A stretch of DNA of 64,000 bases, from the IMG/VR virus record IMGVR_UViG_3300032245_001746, positions 1 to 64,000 of that record; one strand, given 5' to 3'. A model generated the notes under the pieces. The model saw only the letters and a program-made list of their open reading frames with translations, ran no database searches and was not told where the DNA came from. A program made the position numbers and the translations under genes. Shown here one piece after another: positions 13,177 to 56,040 of the stretch; position 1 is the stretch's first letter, and the number at the start of each line of letters is the position of its first letter.

Positions 13177-14319
13177 TTAATTAATATTTTTAATTTTAAC
13201 AAATCTAGGTCCAAATTTTTTAACTTTGGCTTTTCTTGCCAATTCATACTTTACAATCTCACTAATTTCAATTGGTGAAGGTAAATTGTCTTTAATAAGA
13301 TCTTTGTCAAGTAATTTGATCTTGCTTACTATAGCCTCAAACAATGATGCATTCCAGTTATTTTTATTCAAATCATTACAAATTGATGAAAATGTATACA
13401 GATTGTCTCGCGGAATATCACTTCCACATAAAATATCAACCTCATATTGTTTAGTATAATTATAAGAAAATCTATCAGAACATAAAATATATGGACACCT
13501 AGCAATTATTGCTAGTCTGGAAATTCCATTAAAAATATCTAAAACCATACCGCAACTTCTTATTGCAGACAAAATGTTTAAAATATCATTATTTTTTATA
13601 AAAATACATTTATCAAAATAATTTAATGATAAATCATAAGTTTTAAAATCCTGATAAATTACAGGAGTAATATTTTCAGAAATTAATTTGTCAATTAAAG
13701 AACTCCAAAATAACTCTGAAATATATTCAAAATGATATCTTCCATTTTTCCACTCTTGAATGTGAGTAGTAGGATGAATGAAAATTTTATTAGGATGCTC
13801 AGACATCTTTTTATTAAAATCATTTCCAAGTATGGAAGAAGACGGAATTGACGGTAAAAACTTTTTAATGTTTTTATAGTTATCAAAAAATTCTTGTCTA
13901 AAACCATTATTATAACAATTATTTAAAACAGAAATATCTAAAATTTCTGGAAAATAATTATTTAAAGCTCGCTTATATCCAGATAATGCTTCAGAAGTAT
14001 TGTTTTGATTCACAGAACTTAAATATATTGATTTTAAATTATTCAAATCAGATATTTCCCAATATTCATCAACATATGGAAATAAACTTTGATTACCATT
14101 CCAAGAACATAATATAAAATATTTACTAGATTTAGATTCTTTTCTAAATCTTTCCATTAATAGACTAGAAACTGGCAAAATGGATTTTAAATCACCAAAA
14201 TAAAACAAAATGGTAACATTAGACATAGTTGTAGGAATATTGTTTTCTATATATTTAACTCTTTTAAACCCACAATTATCAGCAGCTTTCTGTAATATTT
14301 GTTGTACTGTTATTGTCAT
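13177..14319 (-). CDS. GT-B / GT9 (heptosyltransferase)-like protein
   Basis: FGDL..., PYVDEYW, IFIHP..W, LDIFNGISRLAIIARCPYI; paralogue of upstream gene. Confidence 0.55.
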   Translation of the reverse strand: MTITVQQILQKAADNCGFKRVKYIENNIPTTMSNVTILFYFGDLKSILPVSSLLMERFRKESKSSKYFILCSWNGNQSLFPYVDEYWEISDLNNLKSIYLSSVNQNNTSEALSGYKRALNNYFPEILDISVLNNCYNNGFRQEFFDNYKNIKKFLPSIPSSSILGNDFNKKMSEHPNKIFIHPTTHIQEWKNGRYHFEYISELFWSSLIDKLISENITPVIYQDFKTYDLSLNYFDKCIFIKNNDILNILSAIRSCGMVLDIFNGISRLAIIARCPYILCSDRFSYNYTKQYEVDILCGSDIPRDNLYTFSSICNDLNKNNWNASLFEAIVSKIKLLDKDLIKDNLPSPIEISEIVKYELARKAKVKKFGPRFVKIKNIN

Positions 14320-15487
14320 TTTTATTTCCAATTCTTGAATCATTTATGTTTTTTAAATAAAGTGAAGCATCATTAGTATCCAATAAACCAAAAATTTCTT
14401 TAAAATTATCATTTTTTAATTCATCTATAGCCTGATTTACTAATTCAATAGCTTCATTTTGATTGTTTAATACATTAAGATAGTGAGAGATAACAAGTTT
14501 TTTATTTCCAGTTGTTGTTAGATTCAATCTATATCCTTCTTGTCCAGCACCCCAAATTTGATCTGGAGATTCAAACAATATGTAAGGCACCTCCATAATC
14601 GCTGACAATCTAGATGATGCTGTCCAAAATTGAATAGTAAATTCTAATTGTTTTATTATCGCTAGTGTGTATTCTAAATTTCTAGATCTAGGATCTCTAG
14701 AAAAATCAACAATATAATCTACAGGACACTTTAATGTAGATTGTTCTTCGCCTAACCATATAGGATTATAACCAAGATTTTTTAAGTTTTCTATTAATTT
14801 AATATAGAATTCTGATGGTAGATTTCTTCCGTAGCACTGTCTGTTTCTCGCAAATATTCCAACAGGATTGTTTTTCAACAATAATTTTGCATCATTCATA
14901 ACATGTGATGATGGAGACGGTATTTTTGTTGCAATTTTTTTATAATATGAAACGTCAGAATAAATAGATTTATTTAAAAAATTAGAATTGCATTTTGGAC
15001 ATTGGTCAGATTTAGTAATTGTGCTCCATGTATGTTTACAATTTTTGCAATTAGAATAAATATAATAATTACCCATATTTTTAGTAGTAATTATTTTAGA
15101 ATAATTAGCAATATTTTTTTCTAATATTTTTATGTTTTTAGAAACATTATGAAATGCCCTAGCATATTCCCTAAGCCACATCAATTCTGGTTTTAATTCC
15201 CAAAATTCATCAACTAAATGCTTGTAAAGATATTCTCTACCATACCAGCCCAAAACTATAAAATATTTATTTGGATTTTGTTTTTTTATTATATCTATAG
15301 AATATAAAACACCCAATATTTCGCAACCAAATTCACTAAAACAACTTATGTAAACTATATCTTTATCTGGTGGTTTGTCGATATTACTAAATTTAAATAT
15401 ATTAAATTTAATATTATCAATATATGGTTCTTGTTTTATTTCAACTTTATTACCTGGATTATAAAATTTAGCTTTTAATAACTTCAT
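14279..15487 (-). CDS. GT-B / GT9-like protein with Zn ribbon
   Basis: EFGCE, LVDEFW, CKNC..CPKC, RNLPSEFYIKLI, TASSRLSAIMEVPYI. Confidence 0.55.
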   Translation of the reverse strand: MKLLKAKFYNPGNKVEIKQEPYIDNIKFNIFKFSNIDKPPDKDIVYISCFSEFGCEILGVLYSIDIIKKQNPNKYFIVLGWYGREYLYKHLVDEFWELKPELMWLREYARAFHNVSKNIKILEKNIANYSKIITTKNMGNYYIYSNCKNCKHTWSTITKSDQCPKCNSNFLNKSIYSDVSYYKKIATKIPSPSSHVMNDAKLLLKNNPVGIFARNRQCYGRNLPSEFYIKLIENLKNLGYNPIWLGEEQSTLKCPVDYIVDFSRDPRSRNLEYTLAIIKQLEFTIQFWTASSRLSAIMEVPYILFESPDQIWGAGQEGYRLNLTTTGNKKLVISHYLNVLNNQNEAIELVNQAIDELKNDNFKEIFGLLDTNDASLYLKNINDSRIGNKNDNNSTTNITESC

Positions 15488-15502
15488 AACCTAATTAAGT
15501 AA

Positions 15503-16585
15503 TTATTTTCTTGCTATTCTCAAAATTCTTTTCTTTTCTTTCAAATTAAGTAATTCCCAAGTTTCTTTTTTAACATCATCATCTTCCTCTTCATCAAAAG
15601 ATGATCCAGCTAAAGAATACCTGTATGCACCACAACCTAGTTTTCCGCCTCCGTTTCCGTATTTACCAGCTAACTCCTTACATAAGGTTGGAACCATTAC
15701 AGATGCATTCCTGCTTCTAACACAACCTTCTATTCTATCACCATCAACAATAGCAAATGCAACAGCAGTATTAACATCTTCCCAAGATATCATATTGTCA
15801 GCCATATCTGCAATCATATCTCTATGTCTTGATGGAATAATACCTAAACCAACAATTCCTAAACCTTCAGAAATTTCTGCTTTCTCAACAGCAGCAGCTT
15901 TGTGTTCAATCCAAAATTTAGGTCGTTCAAAATTAATTATTTTTTTCAAATTAACTGGATGCCTATAATCGAACATTTGTGCCCAAGCTAAAAATTCATG
16001 CTCCGTAGCATCGTCAGACATTAAAGACTCAGTATCAGTACTAATTCCTACCATTATAGCTGTTGCAACTTTAATGTCATGATCATTATCATCAGAAAAA
16101 CTCAAGTTAAAATTAGAAATTAAATTAAATATAGTACCACAACAACTTCCAGCTTTTAAATTAATGAATAATCCATTAAACCCACCATTAGGTATTTCTT
16201 TATGATGATCAATAACTAGATCAAAATCAACTTTATTTCCATTTAATCCAGCATTTGCTGGAACTGTATCGACTAAAATATTAAAATCATTATTTGACGG
16301 AATATATTCTTTAACATGATGTAAATTTGGATCTAATAAATTTACCATTGCTATATTTTGTGGATGCGATATTGTTTTATCATAATACGATATCGTTTCA
16401 ACAGAAGGGTAAAGTTTTGAAATCATCCACTCAACAGCCATCATGGAACCAATCGCATCTGGATCTGGATAATTATGTGTGAAAATTACCACTCTTGGTG
16501 GTTTATCACTATTAAATTTTTGATTAAATAATTCTTTTAAATTAATAAAATATTGCGGTTTATTACCCGACGTGTCTTCTTCCAT
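15503..16585 (-). CDS. DHH/DHHA1 phosphoesterase (NrnA-like)
   Basis: HNYPDPDAIGS, LVD, IDHH, TDT, GGG. Confidence 0.9.
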   Translation of the reverse strand: MEEDTSGNKPQYFINLKELFNQKFNSDKPPRVVIFTHNYPDPDAIGSMMAVEWMISKLYPSVETISYYDKTISHPQNIAMVNLLDPNLHHVKEYIPSNNDFNILVDTVPANAGLNGNKVDFDLVIDHHKEIPNGGFNGLFINLKAGSCCGTIFNLISNFNLSFSDDNDHDIKVATAIMVGISTDTESLMSDDATEHEFLAWAQMFDYRHPVNLKKIINFERPKFWIEHKAAAVEKAEISEGLGIVGLGIIPSRHRDMIADMADNMISWEDVNTAVAFAIVDGDRIEGCVRSRNASVMVPTLCKELAGKYGNGGGKLGCGAYRYSLAGSSFDEEEDDDVKKETWELLNLKEKKRILRIARK

Positions 16586-16596
16586 TTTAAAACGCC

Positions 16597-17046
16597 CTAA
16601 TTATAAATTAAATTTTTTTGTCTAAGCCACTCGCTCAGATCGACTTGAATATTGGTATTATTACTATCTTTTGTAGTAATGTAAATCTGAACTTTCCAGT
16701 AATTGTCATATTTATTTTTTAATATTATTTTAGGATTACTGCAATTTGCAAGTAAATTGATCACTTGTTTTTCAGAACCCTTAACTGATTCGACATCAAG
16801 AAATGCATGAATGTTTCTGCCATCTTTTAAAATGACTTCAAATTCATGTCCTTTAATAACATTAAATTTTAAAACATCCAAAGGATTTTTCATTTCAATT
16901 AATGCATTTGAAATAGGATCAGATTCATAATGAATTTTTATTCTATGTGAAAATAAATATACGAAAACAGAAAATGTTATCGTAATTAAAAATAAAAATA
17001 AAAATAAATCTTGTTTTTTCATTTTAAATATTAATTGGTGCTGCAA
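16597..17046 (-). CDS. Membrane-anchored protein, possible SNase-like OB fold
   Basis: N-terminal TM; VIKGHEFEV and DLSEWLRQKNL echo thermonuclease fold without catalytic motif. Confidence 0.4.
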   Translation of the reverse strand: MQHQLIFKMKKQDLFLFLFLITITFSVFVYLFSHRIKIHYESDPISNALIEMKNPLDVLKFNVIKGHEFEVILKDGRNIHAFLDVESVKGSEKQVINLLANCSNPKIILKNKYDNYWKVQIYITTKDSNNTNIQVDLSEWLRQKNLIYN

Positions 17047-18210: not shown

Positions 18211-18618
18211 TTAGCTTAAAATTGTTCCATTTAAAATATTAGCACAAGACCAGTGCGGATCATTGTGAGGAATATATTCTTTATTGGTATAAAAACTCAT
18301 TTGAAATGTATATTTATAAGGTTTTTCAAAAACTTCTTCCAATTCCATGCCAGATTTTAAATCATTAATAATGCTAATTGGCAATTTAACACTATCTTCT
18401 TCTGTTGCAAGAAATACTTTTTTAGCAAATTGCGTTGCAGCAATTGCTGCACCATCTGTCATTAAAATAGAAACAAATCTTTGTTTGTCGATTCCATTTA
18501 ACAATTCAGCTATAGCGGTATATACCGCTATAACCTGACCTTTTTTTGGTTCATGTAATCTAATATCAAAAAAACAATCATCAAAATTTGATTCGTTTAT
18601 AATTAATTCATTATCCAT
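18211..18618 (-). CDS. Hypothetical protein
   Basis: 135-aa ORF. Confidence 0.6.
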   Translation of the reverse strand: MDNELIINESNFDDCFFDIRLHEPKKGQVIAVYTAIAELLNGIDKQRFVSILMTDGAAIAATQFAKKVFLATEEDSVKLPISIINDLKSGMELEEVFEKPYKYTFQMSFYTNKEYIPHNDPHWSCANILNGTILS

Positions 18619-18626
18619 TTGACTTC

Positions 18627-21260
18627 CTATATTACAATTAATTCTGGTTTCTTTTTAGGCTTAACAACATCCATAAAAGGACGCTTCATTACTAATAATC
18701 TAGTATCATCTTCTTTTTTTTCTGGAATTTCTTTCCATCTAATAGCTTTAGGAGGACTGTCAAATGTATAATTCTTAAAAGGAGGTTCTGGTTTCTTTAA
18801 CCTTATTTTAAGGAAATTACCTTTTCTAATATCAGACTCCCAATATTCTAAATCAGAAGCAAATCTTTGATAATCGACATCCCAAAAAGTTACTTTAAAT
18901 TTAAAAGAATCGGAATCCTCCATAGTAACCTCATAATATACAGTACCTTTAGCAGATTCTTTACGCTTTGGTTTTTCTATAACCTGCGCTTCAACCATAG
19001 AAATACAAATATTATCTTTAGAATCAAAATCAGAAATGGTAAATCCACCAGAATAATCTGGACTTGAGTCCATCAAATGATTCCAACTAAATCCATAACA
19101 AGAAGATTCTGCGACTTGTACTGGTTCATTAAACAATTTTTGCAAATCTTCATCAATTTCTACTTGAATATCAAATTCATCTAATGACAACAAAGAATCT
19201 TGCTCATTTTTAAGAACATTGCTTTCTTTGGATTTTTTATATTTCTTCAATAACTTCCAAGTTTCATGTATTATATCTTTTTGTTCGTTTGAATCAATAA
19301 TTTCTTCACGAAACTTAAAATCATTAAATGATTTAAATGAAGTTTCATCAAAATTTTCAAATTTATCAAAAAATAATTCTGAGAATTCATCTTCAAAAGA
19401 AACTTTCAATTCCAAAATTAATTTAGAAACACTTTTAGCATATCGATCATTTCTTGACGAAATCTTTTTTTGCTCTTCTTTAAAGTATTCATAATATGAA
19501 TATAATTTAGTTCTGTCTGCGTCTTTAAATAATCCAAGAGAAATTAAAGGTTTTAAAACCTTTGCATCTGTACCGAATCGACTTAAAAAATCAACAAATG
19601 AAGAATATGGTTGATTTTCAACAATTCTTTGTGCCACTTCTTCTCCTATTCCTTTTATATTAGAAAATCCAATATAAATTTCATCATCAACAATAGAAAA
19701 ATTATCTTTAGACTTATTCAAATCTAAAGGTTTAATTTTTACATTCATACTTTCAGCTTCTCTTCTATATTCTTTTATTTTAACATCATCTTTTACAGAT
19801 TTTAATATTCCAACAAAAAAATCTAATGGATAATGTGCTTTTAAATATAAAAGGCGAGCAGACAAAATTGTGTAACAAACAGCATGACTTGAATTAAATC
19901 CATATTCGGCAAAAGCTTCTATTTGAGTCCACAATTCTTCAACTTGTTCTTTTGTCCAAGCTAAAACTTTTTGTCCATTTTCAATAAACATATCTTTATA
20001 TTTTTGAAATACTTTAACTTTCTTTTTGGAAATTGCTTTTCTTATTATTTCACAATGCATTTCTGGAATTCCGCCAACAACATTCAATATTTTTAATGTT
20101 TGCTCCTGAAAACACATAACACCATAAGTTTTTTTCAAAATTGGCTCTAATACTGGATGCAATTCATAATATTCTCTTCCCTTTTTTCTTTCAATAAAAC
20201 GTTCATCCATTTTCATAGATAATGGACCTGGACGGTAAATAGACGAATAAATTACCAAATCATAAAAAATATCAACACCACCCTTTTTAACCATTTCTCT
20301 AATACCATCAGAGTCAAACTGAAATATGCATTTTAATCTACCTTGATTCGCTAAATTTAATGCTTTCAAATCAGTAATATAAGCATCTTCATTAGACCAG
20401 TCTGGACAGTTTTCATAAGCACAAATAGAACTTATTCCCAATCTTTGTTTGACAGATTTAGTTATTTGAGCCAACTGTGTTAGATTAGATAATCTTAACG
20501 TATCTATCTTAATAAGACCCAAAGGTCCCAAATCAGTTCCTAATAATCCTTCACCAAAAGCAGAAACATATTTATCACTTTCTGTTTTAACGAACGGAAC
20601 TATATTGTCAATTCTTTGATTTGAGATAATCAAGCCACCAGCATGAGTGCCAACTGTTTTGTTTCTGTTAATTATTCTTCTTACTACATCTGCAACTTCT
20701 GGATTTTCTTCGCAATATTTGCGTAAGTCTGGATATTCCTCAATTGCTTTATCTAAAGATAAAACTTTTCCATCTTCATCTTTAAGACCAATTTTTGTAG
20801 TTATATTTAATATTTCATTACGATCTTTATCGTAAACCCTTGCAGCATCTAAAAATGATGATTTAATCTTAAATGTTCCATATGTTCCAATTGCACATAC
20901 ATTATCTTCACCAAACGTTTTTGGTGCCCAAACATTTCTTATGTAATCACATACTTCATCCTGAAAGTCCGTATCAATATCAGGAAATTCGCCCTGAACC
21001 ATTCGTGGCTCAATATTTATGTCAAAATTATCAACCATACCTAAAAGGTAAGTTATCAACAAATTATTTTCATTATTTTCAAACTTATCGCCATTTTTAA
21101 ATAATTCAAAAATATAATCAAATTCCATTTGATTATCAATTTGTTTGATTTCGTATAAAAGTCGGTCTTGATGTTTTTTATCTTCATTTAATCCAAGTTG
21201 CTTTAATTTTAAATAACAAGCACTTATTATCTCTTTTTTTGGATCAACAGAAACACTCAT
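18627..21260 (-). CDS. dnaE: DNA polymerase III alpha, C-terminal (catalytic Asp, fingers, HhH, OB) subunit of split DnaE
   Basis: PDIDTDF, HAGG, KIDTL, IFQF, YRPGP, QEQ, AEYGFNSSHA, HhH IKGIG; no PHP domain. Confidence 0.93.
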   Translation of the reverse strand: MSVSVDPKKEIISACYLKLKQLGLNEDKKHQDRLLYEIKQIDNQMEFDYIFELFKNGDKFENNENNLLITYLLGMVDNFDINIEPRMVQGEFPDIDTDFQDEVCDYIRNVWAPKTFGEDNVCAIGTYGTFKIKSSFLDAARVYDKDRNEILNITTKIGLKDEDGKVLSLDKAIEEYPDLRKYCEENPEVADVVRRIINRNKTVGTHAGGLIISNQRIDNIVPFVKTESDKYVSAFGEGLLGTDLGPLGLIKIDTLRLSNLTQLAQITKSVKQRLGISSICAYENCPDWSNEDAYITDLKALNLANQGRLKCIFQFDSDGIREMVKKGGVDIFYDLVIYSSIYRPGPLSMKMDERFIERKKGREYYELHPVLEPILKKTYGVMCFQEQTLKILNVVGGIPEMHCEIIRKAISKKKVKVFQKYKDMFIENGQKVLAWTKEQVEELWTQIEAFAEYGFNSSHAVCYTILSARLLYLKAHYPLDFFVGILKSVKDDVKIKEYRREAESMNVKIKPLDLNKSKDNFSIVDDEIYIGFSNIKGIGEEVAQRIVENQPYSSFVDFLSRFGTDAKVLKPLISLGLFKDADRTKLYSYYEYFKEEQKKISSRNDRYAKSVSKLILELKVSFEDEFSELFFDKFENFDETSFKSFNDFKFREEIIDSNEQKDIIHETWKLLKKYKKSKESNVLKNEQDSLLSLDEFDIQVEIDEDLQKLFNEPVQVAESSCYGFSWNHLMDSSPDYSGGFTISDFDSKDNICISMVEAQVIEKPKRKESAKGTVYYEVTMEDSDSFKFKVTFWDVDYQRFASDLEYWESDIRKGNFLKIRLKKPEPPFKNYTFDSPPKAIRWKEIPEKKEDDTRLLVMKRPFMDVVKPKKKPELIVI

Positions 21261-21763
21261 TTTAAATCAACTTTCTTCAAAGAAAAACCCATAGCCAAAA
21301 ACAGATTGTACAAATATTTGCCAGAAAGTAAAGTTATTCCTTTTGAAGTTTTTTCACTATTTCCAGCTACATTTAATATTTTAATATTATTTGTTGTAAT
21401 CCAATTAATTACTTTATCTGTTTTTATTGGATCATTTAAATCAACATCAATATATGGCTTATTATAATAATTAATTGCTTTTAATGTACAAATTTCGCCA
21501 GCAGAATTTTTATGTGTAAAAATTCTTAAAGTACCATCAGCATCTTTCACATTACAATAAGTTCTTGGAGAATAACTAACTGATTTATGTTCCTTTGCAT
21601 TATATGTTATTGCATATTCTGGTCTGGGTCCATCTAACGTCTTAAATCCTTTTGGCATTGTGCCGCCAACTTCAACACCAAAACGATATGCAACAAATAT
21701 AGCTGAAATATCCACCCCATTTTGGAATCCAGATATCAACCGTTTAATCATTTTTAATCTCAC
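21257..21763 (-). CDS. cpYpsA/'putative molybdenum carrier' SLOG protein
   Basis: ISGFQNGVD, GGTMPKG, RTYCNV.DADGT, LNVAGN. Confidence 0.8.
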   Translation of the reverse strand: MRLKMIKRLISGFQNGVDISAIFVAYRFGVEVGGTMPKGFKTLDGPRPEYAITYNAKEHKSVSYSPRTYCNVKDADGTLRIFTHKNSAGEICTLKAINYYNKPYIDVDLNDPIKTDKVINWITTNNIKILNVAGNSEKTSKGITLLSGKYLYNLFLAMGFSLKKVDLK

Positions 21764-36617: not shown

Positions 36618-36788
36618 TTACAATAATTCAGCTTTTTTAATAGAAAAATCAACTACTTCTGAATCTTCATACTCTTTTTTTAAAATTATACCTAATTCAG
36701 ATAAAATAAAGGCTAATCTTTCTAAGGATTCAAAAATATCTTCATCTTTAAAAATAGTAATTTTTTTAATTTCTTTCATTTTCATCAT
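36618..36788 (-). CDS. Small hypothetical protein (56 aa, missed by ORF track)
   Basis: MMKMKEIKKITIFKDEDIFESLERLAFILSELGIILKKEYEDSEVVDFSIKKAELL fills the spoVR-clpP gap. Confidence 0.5.
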   Translation of the reverse strand: MMKMKEIKKITIFKDEDIFESLERLAFILSELGIILKKEYEDSEVVDFSIKKAELL

Positions 36789-38367: not shown

Positions 38368-38392
38368 TATATTTATTTCCTTTTTATTTATA

Positions 38393-39595: not shown

Positions 39596-39627
39596 TAAAA
39601 TTTTTCCTTAAACAAAAATATTAAGAA

Positions 39628-39661
39628 AAATAGCCATAACAATTAATTGTTATGGCTATTT
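39628..39661 (-). terminator. Perfect 34-bp palindrome between prkA and yeaH
   Basis: AAATAGCCATAACAATT/AATTGTTATGGCTATTT with T-run on minus strand. Confidence 0.7.
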
Positions 39662-39685
39662 AGCATTATCAAAAACACTTAACAA

Positions 39686-43891: not shown

Positions 43892-45247
43892 CTAAATGAG
43901 ATTTAATTGTTTTAATTTTTCTGTAGTTGATACACATTCTTGAAAATTAAATATAATTACTTCAGCATATTCTTTTCCAACAACATCTTCTGGATGGTAG
44001 TCCCCACCTTTTACTATCTTTTTAGGTTTTATTTTTTTAATTATTTCTAAAGGAGTATCTTCTTCAAACCAAGTAACATAATCAACAAATTCCAAAGAAG
44101 AAACAATCTTCATTCTATCTTCTAATGAATAAATAGGTCTTTTTTCACCTTTAAGTCTTTTAACAGAATTATCTGAATTAAGAGCAACAACTAGTTTTTC
44201 ACCTTGTTTTTTTGCAAACTTTAAGCATTCTATATGTGCAGGCGTAAGACCCGCATCGAAACAACCATTTGTGAACACTAAATCGTTTGAATTAAACTCA
44301 AAATCAGAATTAACTATTTTTGCATTGCAATTATCATGATGTTTCTTTAAATCATTCAAATCAATAGCATATCCATTAAGTTTTTGAACATATATACTGC
44401 TGGCAAAGAAGGCTATTTCAATAGATTCTTGAATACTCAAATTTAAAGATTGACATATAGAAATAAATGAAATAAAACAATCTCCAGCACCTACAACACT
44501 TTGAACATTTATCGTGTTTTTTGGAACATATTCTCCATATTCATCATATGTTTTATAATACACTCCCTTACCTTCATTTGTTATAATACATACTTTACAA
44601 TTTGTTTCTTTCATCAAAATGTCACATTGTTTCTTCCAATCCTTTGTGCCTGTCATCAAAATAGCTTCTTTGTAATTAGGTTTAAAAATGGTACAACCAT
44701 ACCATTTAGATGCAGGTCCTAATTTAGGATCAACAATTGTTATAATATCTTCACAATTACTTAATATAGATTTTATATATTCCTCGTCAAATAACCCCTT
44801 ATTATAATCAGATAAAACTAAAACATTTGATTCTTGTTTTAATTCATTAAAATAATCTAATAAAACATTACGAACATCAAAAAGTTGTTCCTCATTTAAT
44901 TTATAATTTTCAAATTCATCATCAATTCTGGCAACTTGATTATTTCCACAATAATATCTACTTTTAACTGGAATTTTTGCATTATAATTTCCATGATGTT
45001 CTTCAACTGAAATAAAATAAGCATTTATGAATCTTTCTATTTGTTCATACACTTTGGCAGCACCACCAGAAGTTTTAATTGGCTTTTTTCCATTTAATTT
45101 AATTATAGGAATTGGACATTCTGGTGAAATCCTAGTCATTTCACATTGATAATGTTCATCAATTATGTTATCTCCAAAAACAATAATTTTGTTATTTTTA
45201 TAGCAATTATATTCCAGTAATTTTATAAATTTTTCAATTATATTCAT
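43892..45247 (-). CDS. hldE: Bifunctional heptose kinase / nucleotidyltransferase (HldE/RfaE)
   Basis: GD.IIDE, RISPE.P.P, SDYNKG, VDPK, KPN, GAGD; TNGCFD, LNSDNSVKRLKG..RP, KGGDY. Confidence 0.9.
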   Translation of the reverse strand: MNIIEKFIKLLEYNCYKNNKIIVFGDNIIDEHYQCEMTRISPECPIPIIKLNGKKPIKTSGGAAKVYEQIERFINAYFISVEEHHGNYNAKIPVKSRYYCGNNQVARIDDEFENYKLNEEQLFDVRNVLLDYFNELKQESNVLVLSDYNKGLFDEEYIKSILSNCEDIITIVDPKLGPASKWYGCTIFKPNYKEAILMTGTKDWKKQCDILMKETNCKVCIITNEGKGVYYKTYDEYGEYVPKNTINVQSVVGAGDCFISFISICQSLNLSIQESIEIAFFASSIYVQKLNGYAIDLNDLKKHHDNCNAKIVNSDFEFNSNDLVFTNGCFDAGLTPAHIECLKFAKKQGEKLVVALNSDNSVKRLKGEKRPIYSLEDRMKIVSSLEFVDYVTWFEEDTPLEIIKKIKPKKIVKGGDYHPEDVVGKEYAEVIIFNFQECVSTTEKLKQLNLI

Positions 45248-46169: not shown

Positions 46170-47204
46170 TTAGAATCCAAAAATTTGATTATGTGTTCTG
46201 TTAACTTTAATAAAAGTTACATTATCATATATTTCCATTAAATTAGATGAATTTGTATAAGTACAAGCACTTCTTAATCCACCAAGAATATCACTAACAA
46301 TATTTTGTAATTTTCCTTTATATGGAAGTTCAACAACTTTACCTTCAGAAGCTCTATAATTAGAAACCCCTCCACAATGTTTATTCATTGCTTCTTTAGA
46401 AGACATCCCGTAAAATTTAAATTTGTTTTTTCTTCCATAATCATCATAAGACCAATCTCCTTCACATTCATCACAACCTGCAAACATGCCACCAATCATT
46501 GTCATATCTGCGCCTGCACCGAAGGCTTTAGCTATATCGCCAGCACATGTTATTCCACCATCAGAACATAACTTCATATCGTAAACTATACACTCTTTTG
46601 CAGCTTCTATTATGCAACTTAACTGAGGAACTCCAACACCAGTTTTAATTCTAGTTGTACAAACGCTGCCGCCGCCTATTCCAAATTTTAATATATTTAC
46701 ACCTAATTTTTTAAAATCTGAAACAATTTCTGGAGTCGCTACATTTCCAACCATAAGTGTACAATCTGGTTGTATATCTTTAACTAATTTAATTACATTT
46801 TTAACTAAAGGAGTATAAGCATTAGCTACATCTAAACAAATATTTGGAACAGACACTTGACTACAAACATTTTTTAACTTATCAAAATCAGCTTTTTGAA
46901 CTCCTATAGAATAAAATATTAATTTTTTCTCTTGATCATTTAACGAATTGTAAAAATCTACATATTGCTTCTCTTCATAATGTTTAATCAAACAAGTCAT
47001 CATATTATGTTTAATTAACTCTCTGGCTATAGAAAAAGTACCAACTCCATCCATATTTGAAGCTATAATTGGTATACATTTTCCGTGCGTTTCGGTAAAT
47101 GAGTTTTTAAATAAATCAACTTCAGATCTTGAATTAAGATTAGAGATTGTAGGACGGATTAATACATCTGAAAAATCCAAATAATTATTTTCTAATATCT
47201 TCAT
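46170..47204 (-). CDS. guaC: GMP reductase
   Basis: LDFSDVLIRP, SRSEV, ASNMDGVG, DVANAY, GIGGGSVCTTR, FYGMSS, YRASEGK; start reassigned to MKILEN. Confidence 0.93.
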   Translation of the reverse strand: MKILENNYLDFSDVLIRPTISNLNSRSEVDLFKNSFTETHGKCIPIIASNMDGVGTFSIARELIKHNMMTCLIKHYEEKQYVDFYNSLNDQEKKLIFYSIGVQKADFDKLKNVCSQVSVPNICLDVANAYTPLVKNVIKLVKDIQPDCTLMVGNVATPEIVSDFKKLGVNILKFGIGGGSVCTTRIKTGVGVPQLSCIIEAAKECIVYDMKLCSDGGITCAGDIAKAFGAGADMTMIGGMFAGCDECEGDWSYDDYGRKNKFKFYGMSSKEAMNKHCGGVSNYRASEGKVVELPYKGKLQNIVSDILGGLRSACTYTNSSNLMEIYDNVTFIKVNRTHNQIFGF

Positions 47205-47217
47205 AAATTTAAAATTT

Positions 47218-47748
47218 CTAATAACAAACAGTATTAACAACTTTGGCAGCATCTTGTAAATTAAACACTTTAAATCCAACACATTCATTAATCATAGGAT
47301 GATCATAAATATCATTGTCTTGATTAATAATAGCAACTACTGGTTTGACTAAAGATTTAGCCCAAGCTATCTCCATAACTGTACCAATAGATATTTTATC
47401 TCCAGTTAAATTTGCTACTATACAAGAACAATTTAAAACATCATTGTAATCCCTTGTAATTACAGCTTTAGAATTGCAAATTACTTTTGTAAATGAATCA
47501 GATTTTTCTATAAATGAATCATTTATAACAGAACCTTTTAATGCATCTTTATTTCTCATGGGAGATAAAAAATTATATCTTGATTTAATAAAATCAAAAT
47601 CAGTTTTACTATCTTTAATAAATCTTTGTTCAGAAACAACCACATTAATAAATTCAAATATAAACTTGTTTCTCCAGTTCACAGATTCACTATAATCTAT
47701 ATTTGTTATTGGACCAGCTAAATAAATTGAATAACTCATAATTTTCAT
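47218..47748 (-). CDS. Nucleoside 2-deoxyribosyltransferase / dNMP N-glycosidase-like
   Basis: IYLAGPI, RD..DV, SIGTVMEIAWA..KP. Confidence 0.85.
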   Translation of the reverse strand: MKIMSYSIYLAGPITNIDYSESVNWRNKFIFEFINVVVSEQRFIKDSKTDFDFIKSRYNFLSPMRNKDALKGSVINDSFIEKSDSFTKVICNSKAVITRDYNDVLNCSCIVANLTGDKISIGTVMEIAWAKSLVKPVVAIINQDNDIYDHPMINECVGFKVFNLQDAAKVVNTVCY

Positions 47749-48206
47749 TTCTTTAATAAAGTATAAAATAAAAAATTTCCATAATTATCCGAAGATAATT
47801 CTTCCCATTGATCAATATCAAAATTTGGGAAAAAAGTATCACATTCATGAGCTTTATTAAAATATGAAATATACATTTTTTTCACCAAGTTTAATTCTAA
47901 AGCTTTTTTGTAAATCTGTGCTCCACCTATAATAATAGCATTATTTCCAGATTTATGACAAGCTTCTTCAAGAGAAGAAGATATAAAACAATCATCAGAA
48001 CTTTTCATTGTAGTAGAAACTACAATGTTACAACGATTTTTAAGTGGTTTTTTAGGTAAAGATTCCCAAGTATTTCTTCCCATAATTATATTTGAATTCT
48101 TTGTTTTTTCAACAAATAATGACATGTCTTTAGAATCACGCCAAGGCAAAAAATTGTTTTTTCCAATTCCTTTATTTATATCATATGCTACTATAAGTGA
48201 AATCAT
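47745..48206 (-). CDS. folA: Dihydrofolate reductase
   Basis: GIGKNNFLPW, MGRNTWESLPKKPLKNR, IIGGAQIY, CDTFFP. Confidence 0.96.
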   Translation of the reverse strand: MISLIVAYDINKGIGKNNFLPWRDSKDMSLFVEKTKNSNIIMGRNTWESLPKKPLKNRCNIVVSTTMKSSDDCFISSSLEEACHKSGNNAIIIGGAQIYKKALELNLVKKMYISYFNKAHECDTFFPNFDIDQWEELSSDNYGNFLFYTLLKK

Positions 48207-48240: not shown

Positions 48241-49629
48241 TTAGATCATACCACCTAAAAATTCATTAGATTCTATTTTCAAATAATCTCTTATCTGTTG
48301 TCTAAGATTAGTATACTTTAAAACAATCTTAGGTGGATCAGAAATTTCAATTTTTTCTCCATTTAAAAACTTTTCAATGATAGATTCAATTCTTGAAAAT
48401 TCCCAAAATGGAATTATAAGCAATGGTATTTGATTGTTTTTACAATAATCAATTTTAACTTGATCTCTTTCAATACAATTTAATAAATTTTTATGACCAA
48501 AAAAATCTTTTTTTGAACCAAAAGAACCAGGGCGATAATGTTGCATTCCATGATATTCAATGAAAGAATCATTTACTTGAAAATCATATCTTTTATTTCC
48601 TATTTCTTTAATTGTAACTTCCATATTATATTGAATTTCTCTTAAATCAAATATCTGACATATTTTGATTTCACCTTTTGATCTTGGCTTACATTTATCA
48701 CACCTACATCCTTGTTTAAAATCACAAAAATTTGTTTCAGATTTATTTCCACAACTACAAACATAACATATAGATGTATGATTGTTAACATATTCGTTAG
48801 ATAATAGTTTACACCCTTGATCTTTAAAGTATTGCTTTACTTCTTCAAATGGTGTTTTTAAAACTGTTTTAATTTTTTCAATTCCACATTGTTTGCATCT
48901 TCTTCCATTTTTAAAACTATTAAAATTTATTTTAGATTTATTTCCACAACTACAAATATAATCTAATAAATTATGAGCATTAATATATTCATTAGATAAT
49001 AATTCACATCCTTTATCTTCAAAATATTGTTTTACTTCTTCAAATGATGTTTTCTGAGATTCTTGCGATTTTTTATTTCCACACTGTTTACACCTATTCC
49101 CATTTTTGTAATTATTAAAATTTATTTTTGATTTATTTCCGCAATTACAAACATAATCCATTAAAGTACTATTGTTAGTATATTCGGTAGATAATAATTT
49201 ACATCCTTGATCTTTAAAATATTGCTTTACATAATCATATTTAAGACGTTCAGATCCACCACATTTACTGCATCTGTATCCACTTTTAAAATTGTTAAGA
49301 CTTATTTTTGATTTATTTCCGCAATTACAAATATAATTCATTAAAGTACTATTGTTGGTGTATTCGGTAGATAATAATTCACATCCTTGATCTTTAAAAT
49401 ATTGCTTTACCTCTTCAAATGGTAGTTTTTTAGATTTTTTACATTTTTCACATTTATTTCCAATTTTGGTTCCATATTTATAATTATGTAAACTTATTTT
49501 TGATTTATTTCCACAACTACAAACATAGTCCAACAAATTATGAGCATTAATATATTCAGTAGATAATAATTCACATCCTTGATCTTTAAAATATTGTTTT
49601 ACATAATCATAACTAAGTTTTTTCATCAT
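48241..49629 (-). mobile_element. Free-standing homing endonuclease: five Zn-binding repeats plus Vsr/DUF559-like nuclease
   Basis: VKQYFKDQGC.LLS.EY.N....Y.C.CG repeated 5x; SKGE, RYDF, IEYHGMQHY, RD..K..YC..N.I.L..I. Confidence 0.8.
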
Positions 49630-49728
49630 AAACTCCAAAAATATAAAATCTTATATTTATATAAGATAGAATTTATTTTTATTTAATTTGTTTTAAATGT
49701 AATTTACATTATTTTAAAAATATTTATG

Positions 49729-51675: not shown

Positions 51676-52335
51676 ATGTTTCAAGATGAAAATAAAAACA
51701 AAAGAAAATTCACATGTTTTGTTTGTGGTAGAGTTTTTACTGAATTCGAAGAATTTAAAAATCATATAATTGAAAAACATGAAGAAGGAAGAGATTACGT
51801 TATATGTCCACTAGAAAGATGCAAAACGCCTGTCAGGGATATAAAAATGCATTTCAAAGTGAAACATCCGAGTGAAAAGATTCCAGAAAAAGGACAATCA
51901 AAAGCATTAATTTGGCGGGATGTGAAATCCAATGGAGAAGTTAAAACAAGAAAGCCAAAATTTAGAGAAGGATGGTATCATTCAACAAAAATGAATCAAT
52001 CGTTTTTTTATAGATCAGGATATGAGGCAAAAGTTTTTGAACTATTAGATTCTTGGAATGGCGTGTTAGCATACACAGTAGAAGAATTTAAAATTCCATA
52101 TATTTTTGAAGGAAAACAACACGAATATATTCCAGACATATTTGTTGCGTACACCGATGGAAGCAAAGAGGTTTGGGAAATCAAGCCAGCAACACAAACC
52201 TCTTTAGAAAAAAATAAAGCTAAATGGCATTTTGCTGAAAATGCTTGTAAAGAGCGAAATTGGGTTTTTAGAGTTATAACAGAAAAAGAAATAGAAAAAC
52301 TTAAAAAAACAGTTAGAGACCAATATCTACAATAA
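51676..52335 (+). CDS. TnsA-like endonuclease (T4 gp4 head-completion-like) with N-terminal C2H2 fingers
   Basis: CFVC...H...H, CPLERC...H...H; YRSGYE, YIPDIF, EIKP, AKW. Confidence 0.8.
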   Translation: MFQDENKNKRKFTCFVCGRVFTEFEEFKNHIIEKHEEGRDYVICPLERCKTPVRDIKMHFKVKHPSEKIPEKGQSKALIWRDVKSNGEVKTRKPKFREGWYHSTKMNQSFFYRSGYEAKVFELLDSWNGVLAYTVEEFKIPYIFEGKQHEYIPDIFVAYTDGSKEVWEIKPATQTSLEKNKAKWHFAENACKERNWVFRVITEKEIEKLKKTVRDQYLQ

Positions 52336-52336
52336 T

Positions 52337-52645
52337 TTAATTATCTTTGAAAACAATCCATTCATGATAAAATGGACTTTTTTGTTTTAAAAAATTAGGT
52401 TTTTGATCATAAGGATGTTCAAGTTTTCCATACCATTCATATCCAACTTCATTCCACCAATTTTGCCATTCTTTAATGTTGTTCAATAATCTATTTAACA
52501 ATAAATCAGTTTGTTCTTTGTTTAATTCAACAAATATATCATCTTGATTTTGATCTATTGTTACAATAAAGTTTCCATTATTACATGTGGAAACAGAATA
52601 AGTATTGTTAAAATTTTCTTGAAAGAAACTTTTCATGTATTGCAT
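52337..52645 (-). CDS. Hypothetical protein
   Basis: 102-aa ORF. Confidence 0.55.
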   Translation of the reverse strand: MQYMKSFFQENFNNTYSVSTCNNGNFIVTIDQNQDDIFVELNKEQTDLLLNRLLNNIKEWQNWWNEVGYEWYGKLEHPYDQKPNFLKQKSPFYHEWIVFKDN

Positions 52646-53037
52646 ATTCCATAAAGTGAAGCTGGTCCGTTTGGATCAACTTTTTGTGTAGTTAATCTAT
52701 AACTATCGGAGTCAAAATGTTGAGTAGATGTTTCTATAATAACACAATCTTCTAAAGCAACCATTTGATGAATCAAACCTGGTCTTACATGATAAGCATC
52801 ACCACTATTCATTTCTATTTGTTTAATTATTGTAGAATCACTTTCCGCATAGTTAAATAACATTTTGCCCGAAAAAAGAAATAAGACCTCGTCCTTTAAT
52901 TTGTGAAAATGACATGAACAAAAATGATCTTTTTTAATATTTAAAATTTTACCACAATATTTTTCATTATTACAAATCCATAATTCATTTCCCCAAGATT
53001 TATCTACATAAACCATATTATCTTTATTTAAGAACAT
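52633..53037 (-). CDS. Cupin-fold sugar isomerase-like protein
   Basis: KSWGNELW..N.EKYCGK, CHFH..KDE, H....E.ST.H.DSDSYR. Confidence 0.8.
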   Translation of the reverse strand: MFLNKDNMVYVDKSWGNELWICNNEKYCGKILNIKKDHFCSCHFHKLKDEVLFLFSGKMLFNYAESDSTIIKQIEMNSGDAYHVRPGLIHQMVALEDCVIIETSTQHFDSDSYRLTTQKVDPNGPASLYGICNT

Positions 53038-54885: not shown

Positions 54886-54919
54886 AAAGGTTCCTTAATA
54901 AGGTTTTAAAATTTATTCT

Positions 54920-55201
54920 ATGAAATTTACTAAAAAAAAGAACGATGAAGTTGAGAAGATTTGTAAAAATTGTCTTTTGTATGATATTAAAAATAAATAC
55001 TGTACCGTGATTGTACTTCATGAAGGAAAAAAAATAAATTTACCTACTGATCCTGGTGATTCTTGCATCTTTGAAGATGATGAAGTAAAACAAGTAAAAA
55101 TATGGGTAGAAGACGAAAAAGGCAAAAAAACAGATAAAAATGGTGTTGTAAAAATAGAATATCCTTCTGGATTTTTTGGAGAGGAAACAAATATTGAATG
55201 A
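54920..55201 (+). CDS. Hypothetical Cys-motif protein
   Basis: CKNC...C...C. Confidence 0.55.
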   Translation: MKFTKKKNDEVEKICKNCLLYDIKNKYCTVIVLHEGKKINLPTDPGDSCIFEDDEVKQVKIWVEDEKGKKTDKNGVVKIEYPSGFFGEETNIE

Positions 55202-56040
55202 AAAACTTTTACTTAAAATCATCAAAAAATCAAATTTTTATTTCACATTATCCTTTGAATAACATTCAAGTTGATGAAAATGATATAATAATATTATTAT
55301 GCAACAAATCAATAAAAACACAAGAATTAATTCAATTTAAAAAAAATTTTAATTTTTATAAACAATGTTTAATATTATGTAATACACCAGAAGAAAAAAA
55401 TATTTGTGATAAACAAAAAATATATTCATCATTCATTAATAAAAATTGTTTTATTGATGAATCTATATTCAATATAAAAGAAAATATAAACAAAGAATAT
55501 GATGGAATTTATGCAACTTCAATAAAAGAAAGAAAACGATTACATTTATTAAATGATATACCAAAAATTGCTGTTTTAAAAAATTTTAACCAAGAAGAAC
55601 ATAAACATTTAAATATAGAAAATTTAAATATTATAAACAATTCAATTATAAACAAAGAAGAAATTTGTGAGTATTATAATAAAGCATTATTTGGATGTAT
55701 TTTTTCTATTCAAGATTGTTCATCATCAGTTTCATGTGAATACATGTTGTGTGGATTACCAGTGTTAACAACAAGATCTTCTGGAGGGCGTAGTATATGG
55801 TATAATAAATATAATCATATATTGATAGAACCAAATCAAAATTCTTTAAAAGAAGCTATTAATTTATGTAAAGAAAGAATACAAAAAGGAATATTTAATT
55901 CAGAGTTAATAAGAAGAAATCAAATAAAACTAATGCTTAATTTCAGATTGAAATTCAATAAATTAATCTCTCAATTAACCAATCTAGAATTAGAAGAATG
56001 TATTGACACGTTTAATGAAAATTTCAAATTGCTTCAGTGA
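55198..56040 (+). CDS. Glycosyltransferase family 4-like
   Basis: RKRLHLL, EICEYYNKA, EYMLCGLPVLTTRSSGG. Confidence 0.7.
   Translation: MKNFYLKSSKNQIFISHYPLNNIQVDENDIIILLCNKSIKTQELIQFKKNFNFYKQCLILCNTPEEKNICDKQKIYSSFINKNCFIDESIFNIKENINKEYDGIYATSIKERKRLHLLNDIPKIAVLKNFNQEEHKHLNIENLNIINNSIINKEEICEYYNKALFGCIFSIQDCSSSVSCEYMLCGLPVLTTRSSGGRSIWYNKYNHILIEPNQNSLKEAINLCKERIQKGIFNSELIRRNQIKLMLNFRLKFNKLISQLTNLELEECIDTFNENFKLLQ

What the first reader, a model, noticed from the sequence alone, without database searches (positions are those of the whole stretch)
13177..56040. Dispersed heptose/glycan pathway: HldE, tandem GT9-like paralogues, GT4, cupin (plus GT2 at 4018-4761)
Seen: bifunctional HldE and two adjacent paralogues sharing YFIxxxWxG...VDE[FY]WE with GT-B-like C-termini, plus other GTs and a sugar-isomerase-like cupin. 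Known: HldE makes ADP-heptose, the donor for GT9 heptosyltransferases. Inference: the phage heptosylates virion proteins, DNA or host LPS (receptor masking). GmhA and GmhB are not in this window.
Basis: partly seen in the sequence, partly recalled or inferred. Interest (0 to 1): 0.6.

Follow-up and report, generated by a model that had tools for sequence, protein, structure and literature searches.

The report
Huge-phage heptose kit with cryptic glycosyltransferases
A huge phage from wastewater and river samples carries a conserved enzyme set for making the activated sugar ADP-heptose, plus a phage-only pair of enzymes shaped like heptose transferases, so it very probably attaches sugars to something, though the target is unknown.

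Summary
An HldE-like bifunctional kinase/adenylyltransferase lies at 43892-45247(-), with its catalytic motifs kept. Two adjacent homologous genes lie at 13177-14343 and 14279-15487(-). They match no Pfam or PHROG family. Their predicted structures (pLDDT 91-92) are GT-B folds whose nearest solved relatives are GT9 heptosyltransferases (Z 15-17, against at most 11 for other GT-B enzymes).

The 'dispersed pathway' splits in two. The tandem pair, HldE and the GT2 (4018-4761) are syntenic core genes of a huge-phage clade. The pair is adjacent in 61 of 62 related loci, and HldE is present in 26 of 32 related records. The GT4-like gene (2 of 20) and the cupin (9 of 20) are accessory.

Outside the window, the same 320-kb record encodes an HldD-like epimerase and two Pfam-recognised GT9 proteins, one fused to TPR repeats. 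That strengthens the heptose reading. GmhA and GmhB are absent, also from four near-complete relatives, so the phage needs host-made heptose phosphates.

The pair's donor sugar is not shown. By low-confidence alignment, both proteins lack GT9's D-S/T-G donor motif, and paralogue B has Cys where GT9 has the catalytic Asp. The acceptor is unknown; I favour protein over LPS, and DNA is unlikely.

Verdict: a new variant of a known kind, of moderate interest.

The parts
14279..15487 (-). Paralogue B: phage-specific GT-B protein, structurally GT9-like. A Cys4 zinc-ribbon insert lies in the N-terminal domain (residues ~147-166, about 14990-15049).
   Evidence: No Pfam, PHROG or NCBIfam family. 936 homologues, nearly all on huge-phage contigs, typically 48-62% identical. 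AF2 pLDDT 90.8. Foldseek top hits are 3tov, WaaF, WaaC and TibC. VIA-align gives Z 16.7 for WaaF/3tov, 15 for WaaC and 13.6 for TibC, against at most 11 for other GT-B enzymes. C147, C150, C163 and C166 are invariant.
13177..14343 (-). Paralogue A: homologue of B without the zinc ribbon. It lies immediately downstream of B and overlaps its end. The true start is probably the ATG at 14319.
   Evidence: hhalign of A against B profiles gives E 4.7e-13. AF2 pLDDT 92.5. VIA-align gives Z 15.5 for WaaF, 15.2 for 3tov, 12.5 for WaaC and 11.2 for TibC. It follows B in 61 of 62 related loci. Its closest cluster representative has 380 aa. The alternative ATG was seen.
43892..45247 (-). HldE-like bifunctional heptose-7-phosphate kinase (residues ~18-302) and heptose-1-phosphate adenylyltransferase (residues ~318-447).
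   Evidence: Family and structure matches are; the best solved relatives are HldC 5x9q (1e-19) and HldA 4e84 (4.5e-11). Alignment with E. coli HldE and 12 phage orthologues keeps the motifs GD..D.Y, RISPE.P, GGAA, SDY.KG, VDPK, KPN, GAGD, FTNG.FD, NSD.S...LKG, VKGGDY and STT. (H/T)xGH reads TPAH here. The kinase N-part is about 21 aa shorter than in relatives.
4018..4761 (-). Soluble GT2 (GT-A) glycosyltransferase, a core gene of the clade. Donor and acceptor are unknown.
   Evidence: PF00535 E 7.8e-18. Present at 47-67% identity in 16 of 20 related records and in 4 of 4 near-complete ones. No transmembrane-like segment.
52633..53037 (-). Small cupin, weakly WbuC-like or lyxose-isomerase-like. 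An accessory gene.
   Evidence: Weak matches. Present in 9 of 20 relatives and 2 of 4 near-complete ones.
55198..56040 (+). Short GT4-like protein; only the C-terminal GT-B half is recognised. An accessory gene.
   Evidence: PF00534 27.3 bits against a cut-off of 26.4. No PDB sequence match. Present in 2 of 20 relatives.
12890..13165 (-). Ribosomal protein bS21 homologue directly downstream of the pair. Context only; not shown to belong to the system.
   Evidence: PF01165 E 1.7e-8. It follows paralogue A in 51 of 62 loci.

Best explanation
The window is the first 64 kb of a huge phage, held as a 320-kb fragment with an estimated full size near 500 kb, from wastewater and river samples. This phage clade carries a conserved late branch of the ADP-heptose pathway.

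The HldE-like enzyme would phosphorylate heptose 7-phosphate and adenylylate heptose 1-phosphate. An HldD-like epimerase outside the window would convert ADP-D,D-heptose to ADP-L,D-heptose. The first step (GmhA isomerase) and the phosphatase step (GmhB) must come from the host.

The product would feed several phage GT9-type transferases. These include two that Pfam recognises outside the window, one of them fused to TPR repeats.

The tandem pair 13177-15487 is a deeply diverged, phage-only offshoot of the GT9 fold. It is core, always adjacent, overlapping and probably translationally coupled. It most likely works as a two-subunit cytoplasmic glycosyltransferase acting on a macromolecule. My best guess is heptosylation of protein, by analogy with TibC/AAH.

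Shown: gene identities, folds, conservation, synteny, and the absence of GmhA and GmhB. Inferred: enzymatic activity, heptose as the pair's donor, heteromer formation, and protein as acceptor.
For: - HldE motifs are intact.
- HldE occurs in 18/20 large and 8/12 fragmentary related records, always 15-35 kb from the pair.
- The HldD-like gene scores 213 bits on TIGR02197 against 86 for GalE, and is found in 5/5 genomes searched, near GT9 genes.
- PF01075 genes are present in this genome. They also occur in 14/20 relatives and all 4 near-complete ones, with 2-5 each. Many lie in 450-550-aa frames like the TPR fusion, and one abuts HldE in G011.
- Both paralogues have GT9 structures as nearest neighbours, well separated from other GT-B enzymes. 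They show weak full-length profile similarity to GT9 (E 6.6e-5 and 4e-4). An ESM-Atlas neighbour cluster is partly PF01075.
- The pair is adjacent in 61/62 loci.
- No transmembrane-like segments were found.
- The TPR fusion and B's zinc-ribbon insert fit macromolecular acceptors. TibC likewise carries a Cys4 metal finger used in substrate binding (PMC4358343).
Against: - No family member reaches Pfam GT9, and profile searches of the PDB find no glycosyltransferase.
- In low-confidence hhalign alignments, the GT9 D-S/T-G donor motif reads W-T-A in B and F-N-G in A. WaaC's Asp13 position is Cys55 in B.
- Co-occurrence with HldE is weak evidence, because both belong to the clade's syntenic core.
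- The complete relative G003 keeps the pair but has lost the HldE kinase domain through a DHFR-HldC fusion.
- HldE and HldD score below NCBIfam equivalog cut-offs. This window's HldE kinase domain is shortened, and its HxGH motif reads TPAH.
- The host is unknown, so host supply of GmhA and GmhB is unverified.
- No acceptor has been identified.
Confidence: 0.45

Rival explanations
1. Host envelope remodelling. HldE, HldD and the GT9-type enzymes, including the pair, act on the host's lipid A-Kdo core. The effect would be to maintain or alter LPS during a long infection, for example superinfection exclusion by receptor change. This is how such genes are usually read in cyanophages.
For: The characterised LPS members of GT9 (WaaC, WaaF) act on the LPS inner core, and they are the top structural hits. 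Cyanomyophages S-CAM1, S-CAM3 and S-SSM7 carry HldA/HldC, and S-CAM3 also GmhA, annotated as LPS genes. A wastewater huge-phage paper reads a heptosyltransferase I as an LPS auxiliary gene (PMC10747093).
Against: Each genome carries several Pfam-level GT9 genes (2-5 in relatives) in addition to the pair, and some are fused to TPR repeats. The pair is a highly conserved core gene set (about 50% identity across the clade), not a host-like moron. B has a zinc ribbon, and the donor and base motifs are altered. The host, and whether its LPS contains heptose, are unknown.
Confidence: 0.22
2. The tandem pair has nothing to do with heptose. It would be a GT-B enzyme pair, or one enzyme plus a non-catalytic partner, that uses another donor. 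Alternatively it has lost transferase activity altogether. Its co-occurrence with HldE would then only reflect shared membership of the clade's core genome.
For: No Pfam GT9 hit appears in 37 members. The D-S/T-G motif is replaced in both proteins, and B has Cys at the catalytic Asp position. The pair lies 15-35 kb from HldE, inside a replication/translation block. G003 keeps the pair without the HldE kinase domain. GT9-fold proteins without known catalysis exist: a chloroplast NDH subunit scores Z 12.6-13.7.
Against: Among GT-B structures the GT9 entries stand clearly apart as nearest neighbours for both proteins. B has about 60 invariant residues, many of them charged or polar, as expected of an enzyme. 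A keeps an F-G-D motif like WaaC's M-G-D (consensus; pattern match only). The genome invests in an ADP-heptose supply and in other GT9 genes.
Confidence: 0.25
3. The pair modifies the translation apparatus, such as ribosomal protein bS21, another ribosomal or translation factor, or tRNA. This would be part of the phage's takeover of host translation.
For: bS21 follows the pair directly in 51/62 loci, together with two conserved small ORFs. The surrounding window encodes IF3, methionine aminopeptidase, DnaJ and Cpn10. From general knowledge rather than any test here, GT-B and GT-A enzymes that glycosylate EF-P (EarP) or tRNA queuosine are known elsewhere.
Against: The whole region is syntenic across the clade, so adjacency carries little functional information. 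There is no direct evidence for any acceptor, and no similarity to EarP was seen among the structural hits.
Confidence: 0.06
4. DNA glycosylation. The transferases would decorate hydroxymethylated bases of phage DNA, as T4 does, to evade restriction.
For: T4 alpha- and beta-glucosyltransferases are GT-B enzymes (general knowledge). The window is rich in nucleotide-metabolism genes: dCMP deaminase, DHFR, a TS homologue and a dNMP kinase. HldE sits next to DHFR in relatives.
Against: The TS homologue matches ordinary thymidylate synthases (E 4e-51), and its aligned active-site segment reads Q-R-S-A-D...P-A-N-I against the structure's Q-R-S-A-D...P-F-N-I, keeping the Asn. No hydroxymethylase was identified. 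T4-type DNA glucosyltransferases are not among the listed structural neighbours.
Confidence: 0.04

Closest known systems
GT9 LPS heptosyltransferases WaaC and WaaF (PDB 2H1H, 1PSW) and Veillonella GT9 (3TOV)
   Same: The two-Rossmann GT-B architecture matches over about 250-270 residues. They are the best structural neighbours of both paralogues (Z 15-17 for B, 12-15.5 for A). There is a basic residue pair at the position of the K-(R)-W-P phosphate-binding motif, and the start of the C-terminal domain aligns.
   Different: No Pfam-level sequence similarity. The D-S/T-G donor motif is replaced. B has Cys55 where WaaC has Asp13. B carries a Cys4 zinc-ribbon insert. Both have a ~40-residue N-terminal extension. 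The pair is tandem, found only on phage-type contigs (a few are filed under archaeal MAG names), and is a core gene set.
BAHT protein O-heptosyltransferases TibC/AAH (PDB 4RAP, 4RB4; PMC4358343)
   Same: A GT9-like GT-B core (Z 13.6 for B, 11.2 for A). It carries a Cys4 metal finger inserted in the catalytic domain, acts in the cytoplasm and takes a protein acceptor. This is the model for the mechanism I favour.
   Different: TibC's iron finger is inserted in the C-terminal lobe (Cys339-370). B's ribbon is in the N-terminal half (Cys147-166). No N-terminal beta-barrel or beta-hairpin thumb is evident. Structural similarity is lower than to WaaF. No autotransporter-like acceptor has been identified.
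E. coli HldE (RfaE) and Burkholderia HldA/HldC (PDB 4E84, 5X9Q)
   Same: The two-domain order is the same and all kinase and adenylyltransferase motifs align.
   Different: About 28% identity. The score is below the equivalog cut-off (244 against 521 bits). The kinase N-part is shorter. The HxGH motif reads TPAH in this copy, whereas most phage orthologues have H-x-G-H.
Cyanomyophage heptose genes (S-CAM1, S-CAM3, S-SSM7)
   Same: These phages also encode heptose kinase and adenylyltransferase functions.
   Different: In cyanophages the two domains are separate genes, and S-CAM3 also carries GmhA. Here the domains are fused, GmhA is absent, and the gene is a clade-wide core gene accompanied by HldD and several GT9-type genes.
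GtfA/GtfB-type two-protein GT-B glycosyltransferases of streptococci (analogy from general knowledge; not tested here)
   Same: Two adjacent paralogous GT-B genes, one more conserved than the other, acting on a protein.
   Different: A different GT family (GT4-like). No sequence or specific structural match was seen.

Membership tests
HldE (NCBIfam NF008454; TIGR02198 + TIGR02199) | Fused PfkB-type kinase domain followed by a cytidylyltransferase-like domain | tested here: met
   PF00294 matches residues 183-292 and PF01467 residues 326-421. NF008454 aligns over residues 94-448.
HldE (NCBIfam NF008454; TIGR02198 + TIGR02199) | Score above the curated equivalog cut-off | tested here: not met
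   244 bits against 521. Domain I scores 151 against 345 and domain II 143 against 181.5. HldE is still by far the best-scoring family.
HldE (NCBIfam NF008454; TIGR02198 + TIGR02199) | Kinase signature motifs: N-terminal GD..D.Y...RISPE.P, GG, and the GAGD catalytic loop | tested here: met
   Alignment with E. coli HldE and 12 phage orthologues and with HldA 4e84. Caveat: a deletion of about 21 residues after the GG motif in this copy.
HldE (NCBIfam NF008454; TIGR02198 + TIGR02199) | Nucleotidyltransferase (H/T)xGH and S-T-T motifs | tested here: inconclusive
   S-T-T is kept. (H/T)xGH reads T-P-A-H, with Gly replaced by Ala. Relatives have H-x-G-H or T-x-G-H.
HldE (NCBIfam NF008454; TIGR02198 + TIGR02199) | [quoted passage not shown] | not testable with these tools
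   Needs an enzyme assay or hldE complementation.
Glycosyltransferase family 9 (Pfam PF01075 / CAZy GT9): paralogues A and B | Sequence match to the family model | tested here: not met
   No PF01075 hit at E<=1 in 37 B-family members. No hit for A or B. Only weak hhalign similarity to a 7-sequence GT9 profile: B E 6.6e-5 at 64% probability, A E 4e-4 at 35%.
Glycosyltransferase family 9 (Pfam PF01075 / CAZy GT9): paralogues A and B | GT-B fold with GT9 structures as nearest neighbours | tested here: met
   For B, WaaF and 3tov give Z 16.7. For A, WaaF gives Z 15.5. Other GT-B families reach at most Z 11 and 10.4.
Glycosyltransferase family 9 (Pfam PF01075 / CAZy GT9): paralogues A and B | Catalytic Asp after the first strand (WaaC Asp13, TibC Asp110) | tested here: inconclusive
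   B aligns Cys55 at this position, with invariant Glu52 and Glu56 beside it. A has a nearly invariant F-G-D51 that resembles M-G-D13 by pattern only. The alignments are low-confidence, and no residue-level structural superposition was available.
Glycosyltransferase family 9 (Pfam PF01075 / CAZy GT9): paralogues A and B | D-S/T-G donor-binding motif (WaaC Asp261-Thr262) | tested here: not met
   hhalign places W288-T289-A290 (B) and F-N-G (A) opposite the D-S-G of WaaF. The alignment is low-confidence.
Glycosyltransferase family 9 (Pfam PF01075 / CAZy GT9): paralogues A and B | Uses ADP-heptose as donor | not testable with these tools
   Needs biochemical assay.
Glycosyltransferase family 2 (PF00535): ORF 4018-4761 | Match above the Pfam gathering score | tested here: met
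   65.4 bits against 23.3.
Glycosyltransferase family 4 (PF00534): ORF 55198-56040 | Match above the Pfam gathering score and a complete two-domain GT-B | tested here: inconclusive
   27.3 bits against 26.4, covering only residues 136-223. At 280 aa the protein is short for a GT-B, and there is no PDB sequence match.
WbuC-family cupin (TIGR04366) / Cupin_2: ORF 52633-53037 | Match above the curated cut-off | tested here: not met
   35.7 against 42; Cupin_2 19 against 27.2; Lyx_isomer 19.3 against 20.8.

The most novel reading that the evidence does not exclude
The tandem GT9-like pair would be a previously undescribed, huge-phage-specific two-subunit glycosyltransferase. It would use phage-made ADP-heptose to heptosylate a component of the gene-expression machinery or of the virion. 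Candidates include the bS21 encoded directly downstream or other translation factors. If so, protein heptosylation would be a core, clade-defining trait of huge phages rather than an auxiliary LPS function.
Probability: 0.12. Interest if true: 0.8.

Novelty: new variant of a known kind. Interest (0 to 1): 0.5.

Why it matters
Phage-encoded heptose genes are usually dismissed as LPS 'auxiliary metabolic genes'. Here HldE, an HldD-like epimerase, several GT9-type genes and a cryptic GT9-fold pair are conserved across a whole clade of 300-600-kb phages. The pair has no family assignment, about 900 homologues and about 50% identity across the clade. Such conservation suggests that glycosylation, possibly protein heptosylation, is central to how these phages replicate. 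The pair also defines an unannotated protein family that current pipelines label 'hypothetical' or 'Zn-ribbon regulator'. Finding its donor and acceptor would add a new branch to the GT9 fold, and could reveal a phage-specific protein modification.

Tried and rejected
Heteromer formation is therefore untested.
- Profile searches of PDB sequences with the A and B families found no glycosyltransferase.
- Pfam, NCBIfam and PHROGs gave nothing for A or B. The only hits were zinc-ribbon models and one sub-threshold TIGR04372 hit for B.
- Megablast of 20 kb against GenBank phages found no match.
- A protein search of the same collection found the pair only in LR756511.1, an unannotated 595-kb uncultured phage.
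- Host inference from the phage IF3 failed. It is 40-48% identical to IF3 from many phyla.
- The cupin as a stand-in for GmhA was considered and set aside. It is accessory (9/20 relatives) and only weakly WbuC-like.
- DNA glycosylation was set aside because the TS homologue looks canonical.
- Literature searches found no description of this pair or of a heptose system in huge phages. One wastewater paper notes a heptosyltransferase I as an auxiliary gene.
- Contigs from RNA libraries tile the pair. The tool warns that DNA may be present in such libraries, so this is not counted as proof of transcription.
- The large representative-protein search was not used, because no claim here rests on absence of relatives.

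Full report
**What the window is.** The window is the first 64 kb of a single-contig virus record of 319,857 bp. CheckV rates it about 63% complete. GC content is about 27%, and nearly all genes lie on the minus strand. The gene content is typical of the 'huge phages':
- DNA polymerase III alpha, gyrase A, and gyrase B carrying an intein;
- the PrkA/DUF444/SpoVR stress module and a ClpP homologue;
- ribosomal protein bS21, IF3, DnaJ, Cpn10 and methionine aminopeptidase;
- dCMP deaminase, DHFR, thymidylate synthase and a dNMP kinase.

Near-identical DNA occurs in wastewater and river metagenomes. The only GenBank phage record with the tandem pair is LR756511.1, an unannotated 595-kb uncultured phage.

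**Checking the observation.**
- HldE is 43892-45247(-), 451 aa, with a PfkB kinase domain and a cytidylyltransferase-like domain. Its best family is HldE itself (NF008454, E 2.4e-72), at 244 bits, below the equivalog cut-off of 521.
- The paralogues are 13177-14343 (A, 388 aa) and 14279-15487 (B, 402 aa).
- The GT2 at 4018-4761 is solid.
- The GT4-like ORF at 55198-56040 barely passes Pfam, on its C-terminal half only.
- The 'cupin' is 52633-53037, with only sub-threshold matches to Cupin_2, lyxose isomerase and WbuC-type cupins.
- GmhA and GmhB are absent from the whole 320-kb record.

**The tandem pair.** Neither protein matches any Pfam, NCBIfam or PHROG family. Yet both belong to large, well-conserved families found almost only on huge-phage contigs. 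B has 936 homologues, typically 48-62% identical. A's homologues are typically 35-60% identical and lie on the same contigs.

Profiles of the two families align over their full length (hhalign E 4.7e-13). They are therefore ancient paralogues. B differs by a Cys4 zinc-ribbon insert, with C147, C150, C163 and C166 invariant.

AlphaFold2 models built on 37-sequence alignments are confident (pLDDT 90.8 and 92.5, pTM 0.88 and 0.90). Foldseek and VIA-align place both in the GT-B fold:

| Structure | B (Z) | A (Z) |
|---|---|---|
| WaaF (1PSW) | 16.7 | 15.5 |
| Veillonella GT9 (3TOV) | 16.7 | 15.2 |
| WaaC | ~15 | 12.5 |
| TibC | 13.6 | 11.2 |
| Any other GT-B family | ≤11 | ≤10.4 |

The ESM Atlas agrees. 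One neighbouring viral cluster is partly PF01075, and the named structural neighbours are GT9 clusters.

Membership of GT9 in the sequence sense is not met. None of 37 B-family members hits PF01075 even at E≤1. PDB profile searches find no glycosyltransferase. hhalign against a small GT9 profile (WaaC, WaaF and five phage GT9 proteins) gives only E 6.6e-5 for B and 4e-4 for A.

Those low-confidence alignments suggest three things.
- The phosphate-binding K-(R)-W-P region is matched by R221-N222 in B.
- The D-S/T-G donor motif is replaced by W-T-A in B and F-N-G in A.
- The catalytic Asp of WaaC aligns with the nearly invariant Cys55 of B, which is flanked by invariant Glu52 and Glu56. A keeps an F-G-D motif by pattern.

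The donor therefore remains open.

**Conservation and context of the pair.** I fetched 62 related loci from IMG/VR and mapped the window's ORFs onto them. A follows B directly in 61 of 62. bS21 follows A in 51, and two small ORFs follow that in 50-53. DNA polymerase III alpha lies upstream in 54.

The pair is therefore a core, syntenic gene pair sitting between replication and translation genes. It is not a dispersed moron. The end of B overlaps the start of A. The likely A start is the ATG at 14319, which suggests translational coupling. No transmembrane-like segments were found in any of the six proteins.

**HldE and the rest of the pathway.** I aligned the window's protein with E. coli HldE and 12 phage orthologues. 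All kinase and adenylyltransferase motifs are kept, including the RISPE.P stretch shared with the heptose kinase HldA. Two peculiarities of this copy are a deletion of about 21 residues after the GG motif and T-P-A-H in place of H-x-G-H. HldE is thus probably active, but this is not proven.

Orthologues occur in 18 of 20 large related records, including all four that are at least 90% complete. They also occur in 8 of 12 fragmentary ones, always 15-35 kb from the pair. In relatives the conserved neighbours of HldE are DHFR and an 88-aa ORF.

Three results from outside the window matter.
1. The same record encodes an HldD-like epimerase at 151591-152496. It scores 213 bits on TIGR02197, with GalE next at 86 bits.
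2. It encodes two proteins that Pfam does recognise as GT9. One is a 314-aa protein at 216239-217183. The other is a 509-aa TPR-repeat fusion at 154994-156523.
3. Relatives carry 2-5 such genes each. Fourteen of 20 records have hits, including all four near-complete genomes. Many hits lie in 450-550-aa frames, and in one genome a GT9 gene abuts HldE.

GmhA-type SIS domains are absent from this record and from four near-complete relatives. Only weak HAD hits stand in for GmhB.

The phage clade thus encodes steps 2, 4 and 5 of the ADP-L,D-heptose route, plus consumers. It must rely on the host for sedoheptulose-7-phosphate isomerase and the bisphosphate phosphatase.

**The other sugar genes.** The GT2 is also core, found in 16 of 20 relatives at 47-67% identity. 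Nothing indicates its donor or acceptor. The GT4-like gene (2 of 20) and the cupin (9 of 20) are accessory.

**Most likely mechanism.** Host GmhA makes heptose 7-phosphate. Phage HldE, with a host phosphatase, and phage HldD convert it to ADP-heptose. Phage GT9-type enzymes transfer heptose to acceptors.

I favour protein acceptors for four reasons.
- One GT9 is fused to TPR repeats, a protein-binding module.
- B carries a Cys4 ribbon reminiscent of the metal finger TibC uses for substrate binding (PMC4358343).
- The proteins appear soluble.
- The genes are core rather than host-like.

All of this is inference. LPS remodelling is the main rival. So is the possibility that the pair uses a different donor, or is not linked to HldE at all. 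The complete relative G003 supports that last point. It keeps the pair, but a DHFR-HldC fusion has removed its HldE kinase domain. DNA glycosylation is unlikely because the thymidylate-synthase homologue looks canonical.

**Comparison with what is known, and novelty.** Heptose kinase and adenylyltransferase genes are already annotated in cyanomyophages. A heptosyltransferase has been noted once as an auxiliary gene in a wastewater huge phage (PMC10747093). The founding huge-phage paper mentions bS21 but neither glycosylation nor heptose.

Two things appear undescribed: the clade-wide conservation of the heptose set, and the cryptic GT9-fold pair. I rate the finding as a new variant of a known kind, of moderate interest.

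**Limits.**
- The complex prediction for A+B was unavailable.
- The host could not be inferred.
- Contigs from three wastewater RNA libraries of one study tile the pair at 95-99% identity. This does not prove transcription.
- No residue-level structural superposition was possible with the tools at hand.

Noticed in passing
L105:2302-3300 (G003:C1, about 211801-212799), a complete 572-kb relative: A single 332-aa ORF fuses an N-terminal DHFR domain (residues 14-154) to the HldC-type adenylyltransferase domain (residues 187-315). The heptose kinase domain that lies between DHFR and HldC in other relatives is gone.
   Followed up: partly
G000:C1:214957-215985 (-), outside the window: An actin-like protein matches Pfam Volactin (E 3e-61). 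Only one 85-aa ORF separates it from the 314-aa Pfam GT9 gene.
   Followed up: no
window 24232-27498 (-): Gyrase B is interrupted by an intein with a LAGLIDADG-type domain. This explains why phage homologues cover only about 60% of the ORF, in two pieces.
   Followed up: no
window 36766-41773 (-): A complete PrkA / DUF444 (YeaH-like) / SpoVR (YcgB-like) triad, a bacterial stress or sporulation-associated module. A ClpP homologue lies at 35884-36579.
   Followed up: no
window 12347-12893 (-) and 11412-11768 (-), 18211-18618 (-): Small ORFs of 86-135 aa without any family. They are as strictly syntenic with the GT pair and bS21 as those genes are with each other (49-54 of 62 loci). They are possible partners or substrates.
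   Followed up: partly
window 46170-48206 (-) and 48241-49638 (-): Between HldE and thymidylate synthase lie an IMPDH/GMP-reductase-like gene, a nucleoside 2-deoxyribosyltransferase-like gene, DHFR and an HNH homing-endonuclease-like ORF. In relatives DHFR abuts HldE directly, so the first two look like insertions.
   Followed up: partly
window 21257-21763 (-): A circularly permuted YpsA-type SLOG domain protein sits between DNA polymerase III alpha and gyrase A. It is conserved in only a few relatives.
   Followed up: no
window 1480-1938 (+): A 152-aa ORF with a weak, sub-threshold match to the ATLF metallopeptidase-like domain (25.7 bits against a cut-off of 27.4). It is probably a small zinc-peptidase-like protein.
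   Followed up: no
G005, G018 (one TGA each), G009 (TAA), G007 and G012 (TAG): relatives, matches to window genes: Single in-frame stop codons lie inside otherwise full-length matches to the GT2, cupin, HldE-like and HldD-like genes in some relatives. These could be assembly errors, pseudogenes or stop-codon recoding. No alternative code was assumed.
   Followed up: no
window 51676-52335 (+): A C2H2 zinc finger fused to a TnsA-like or endonuclease-I-like nuclease domain.
   Followed up: no
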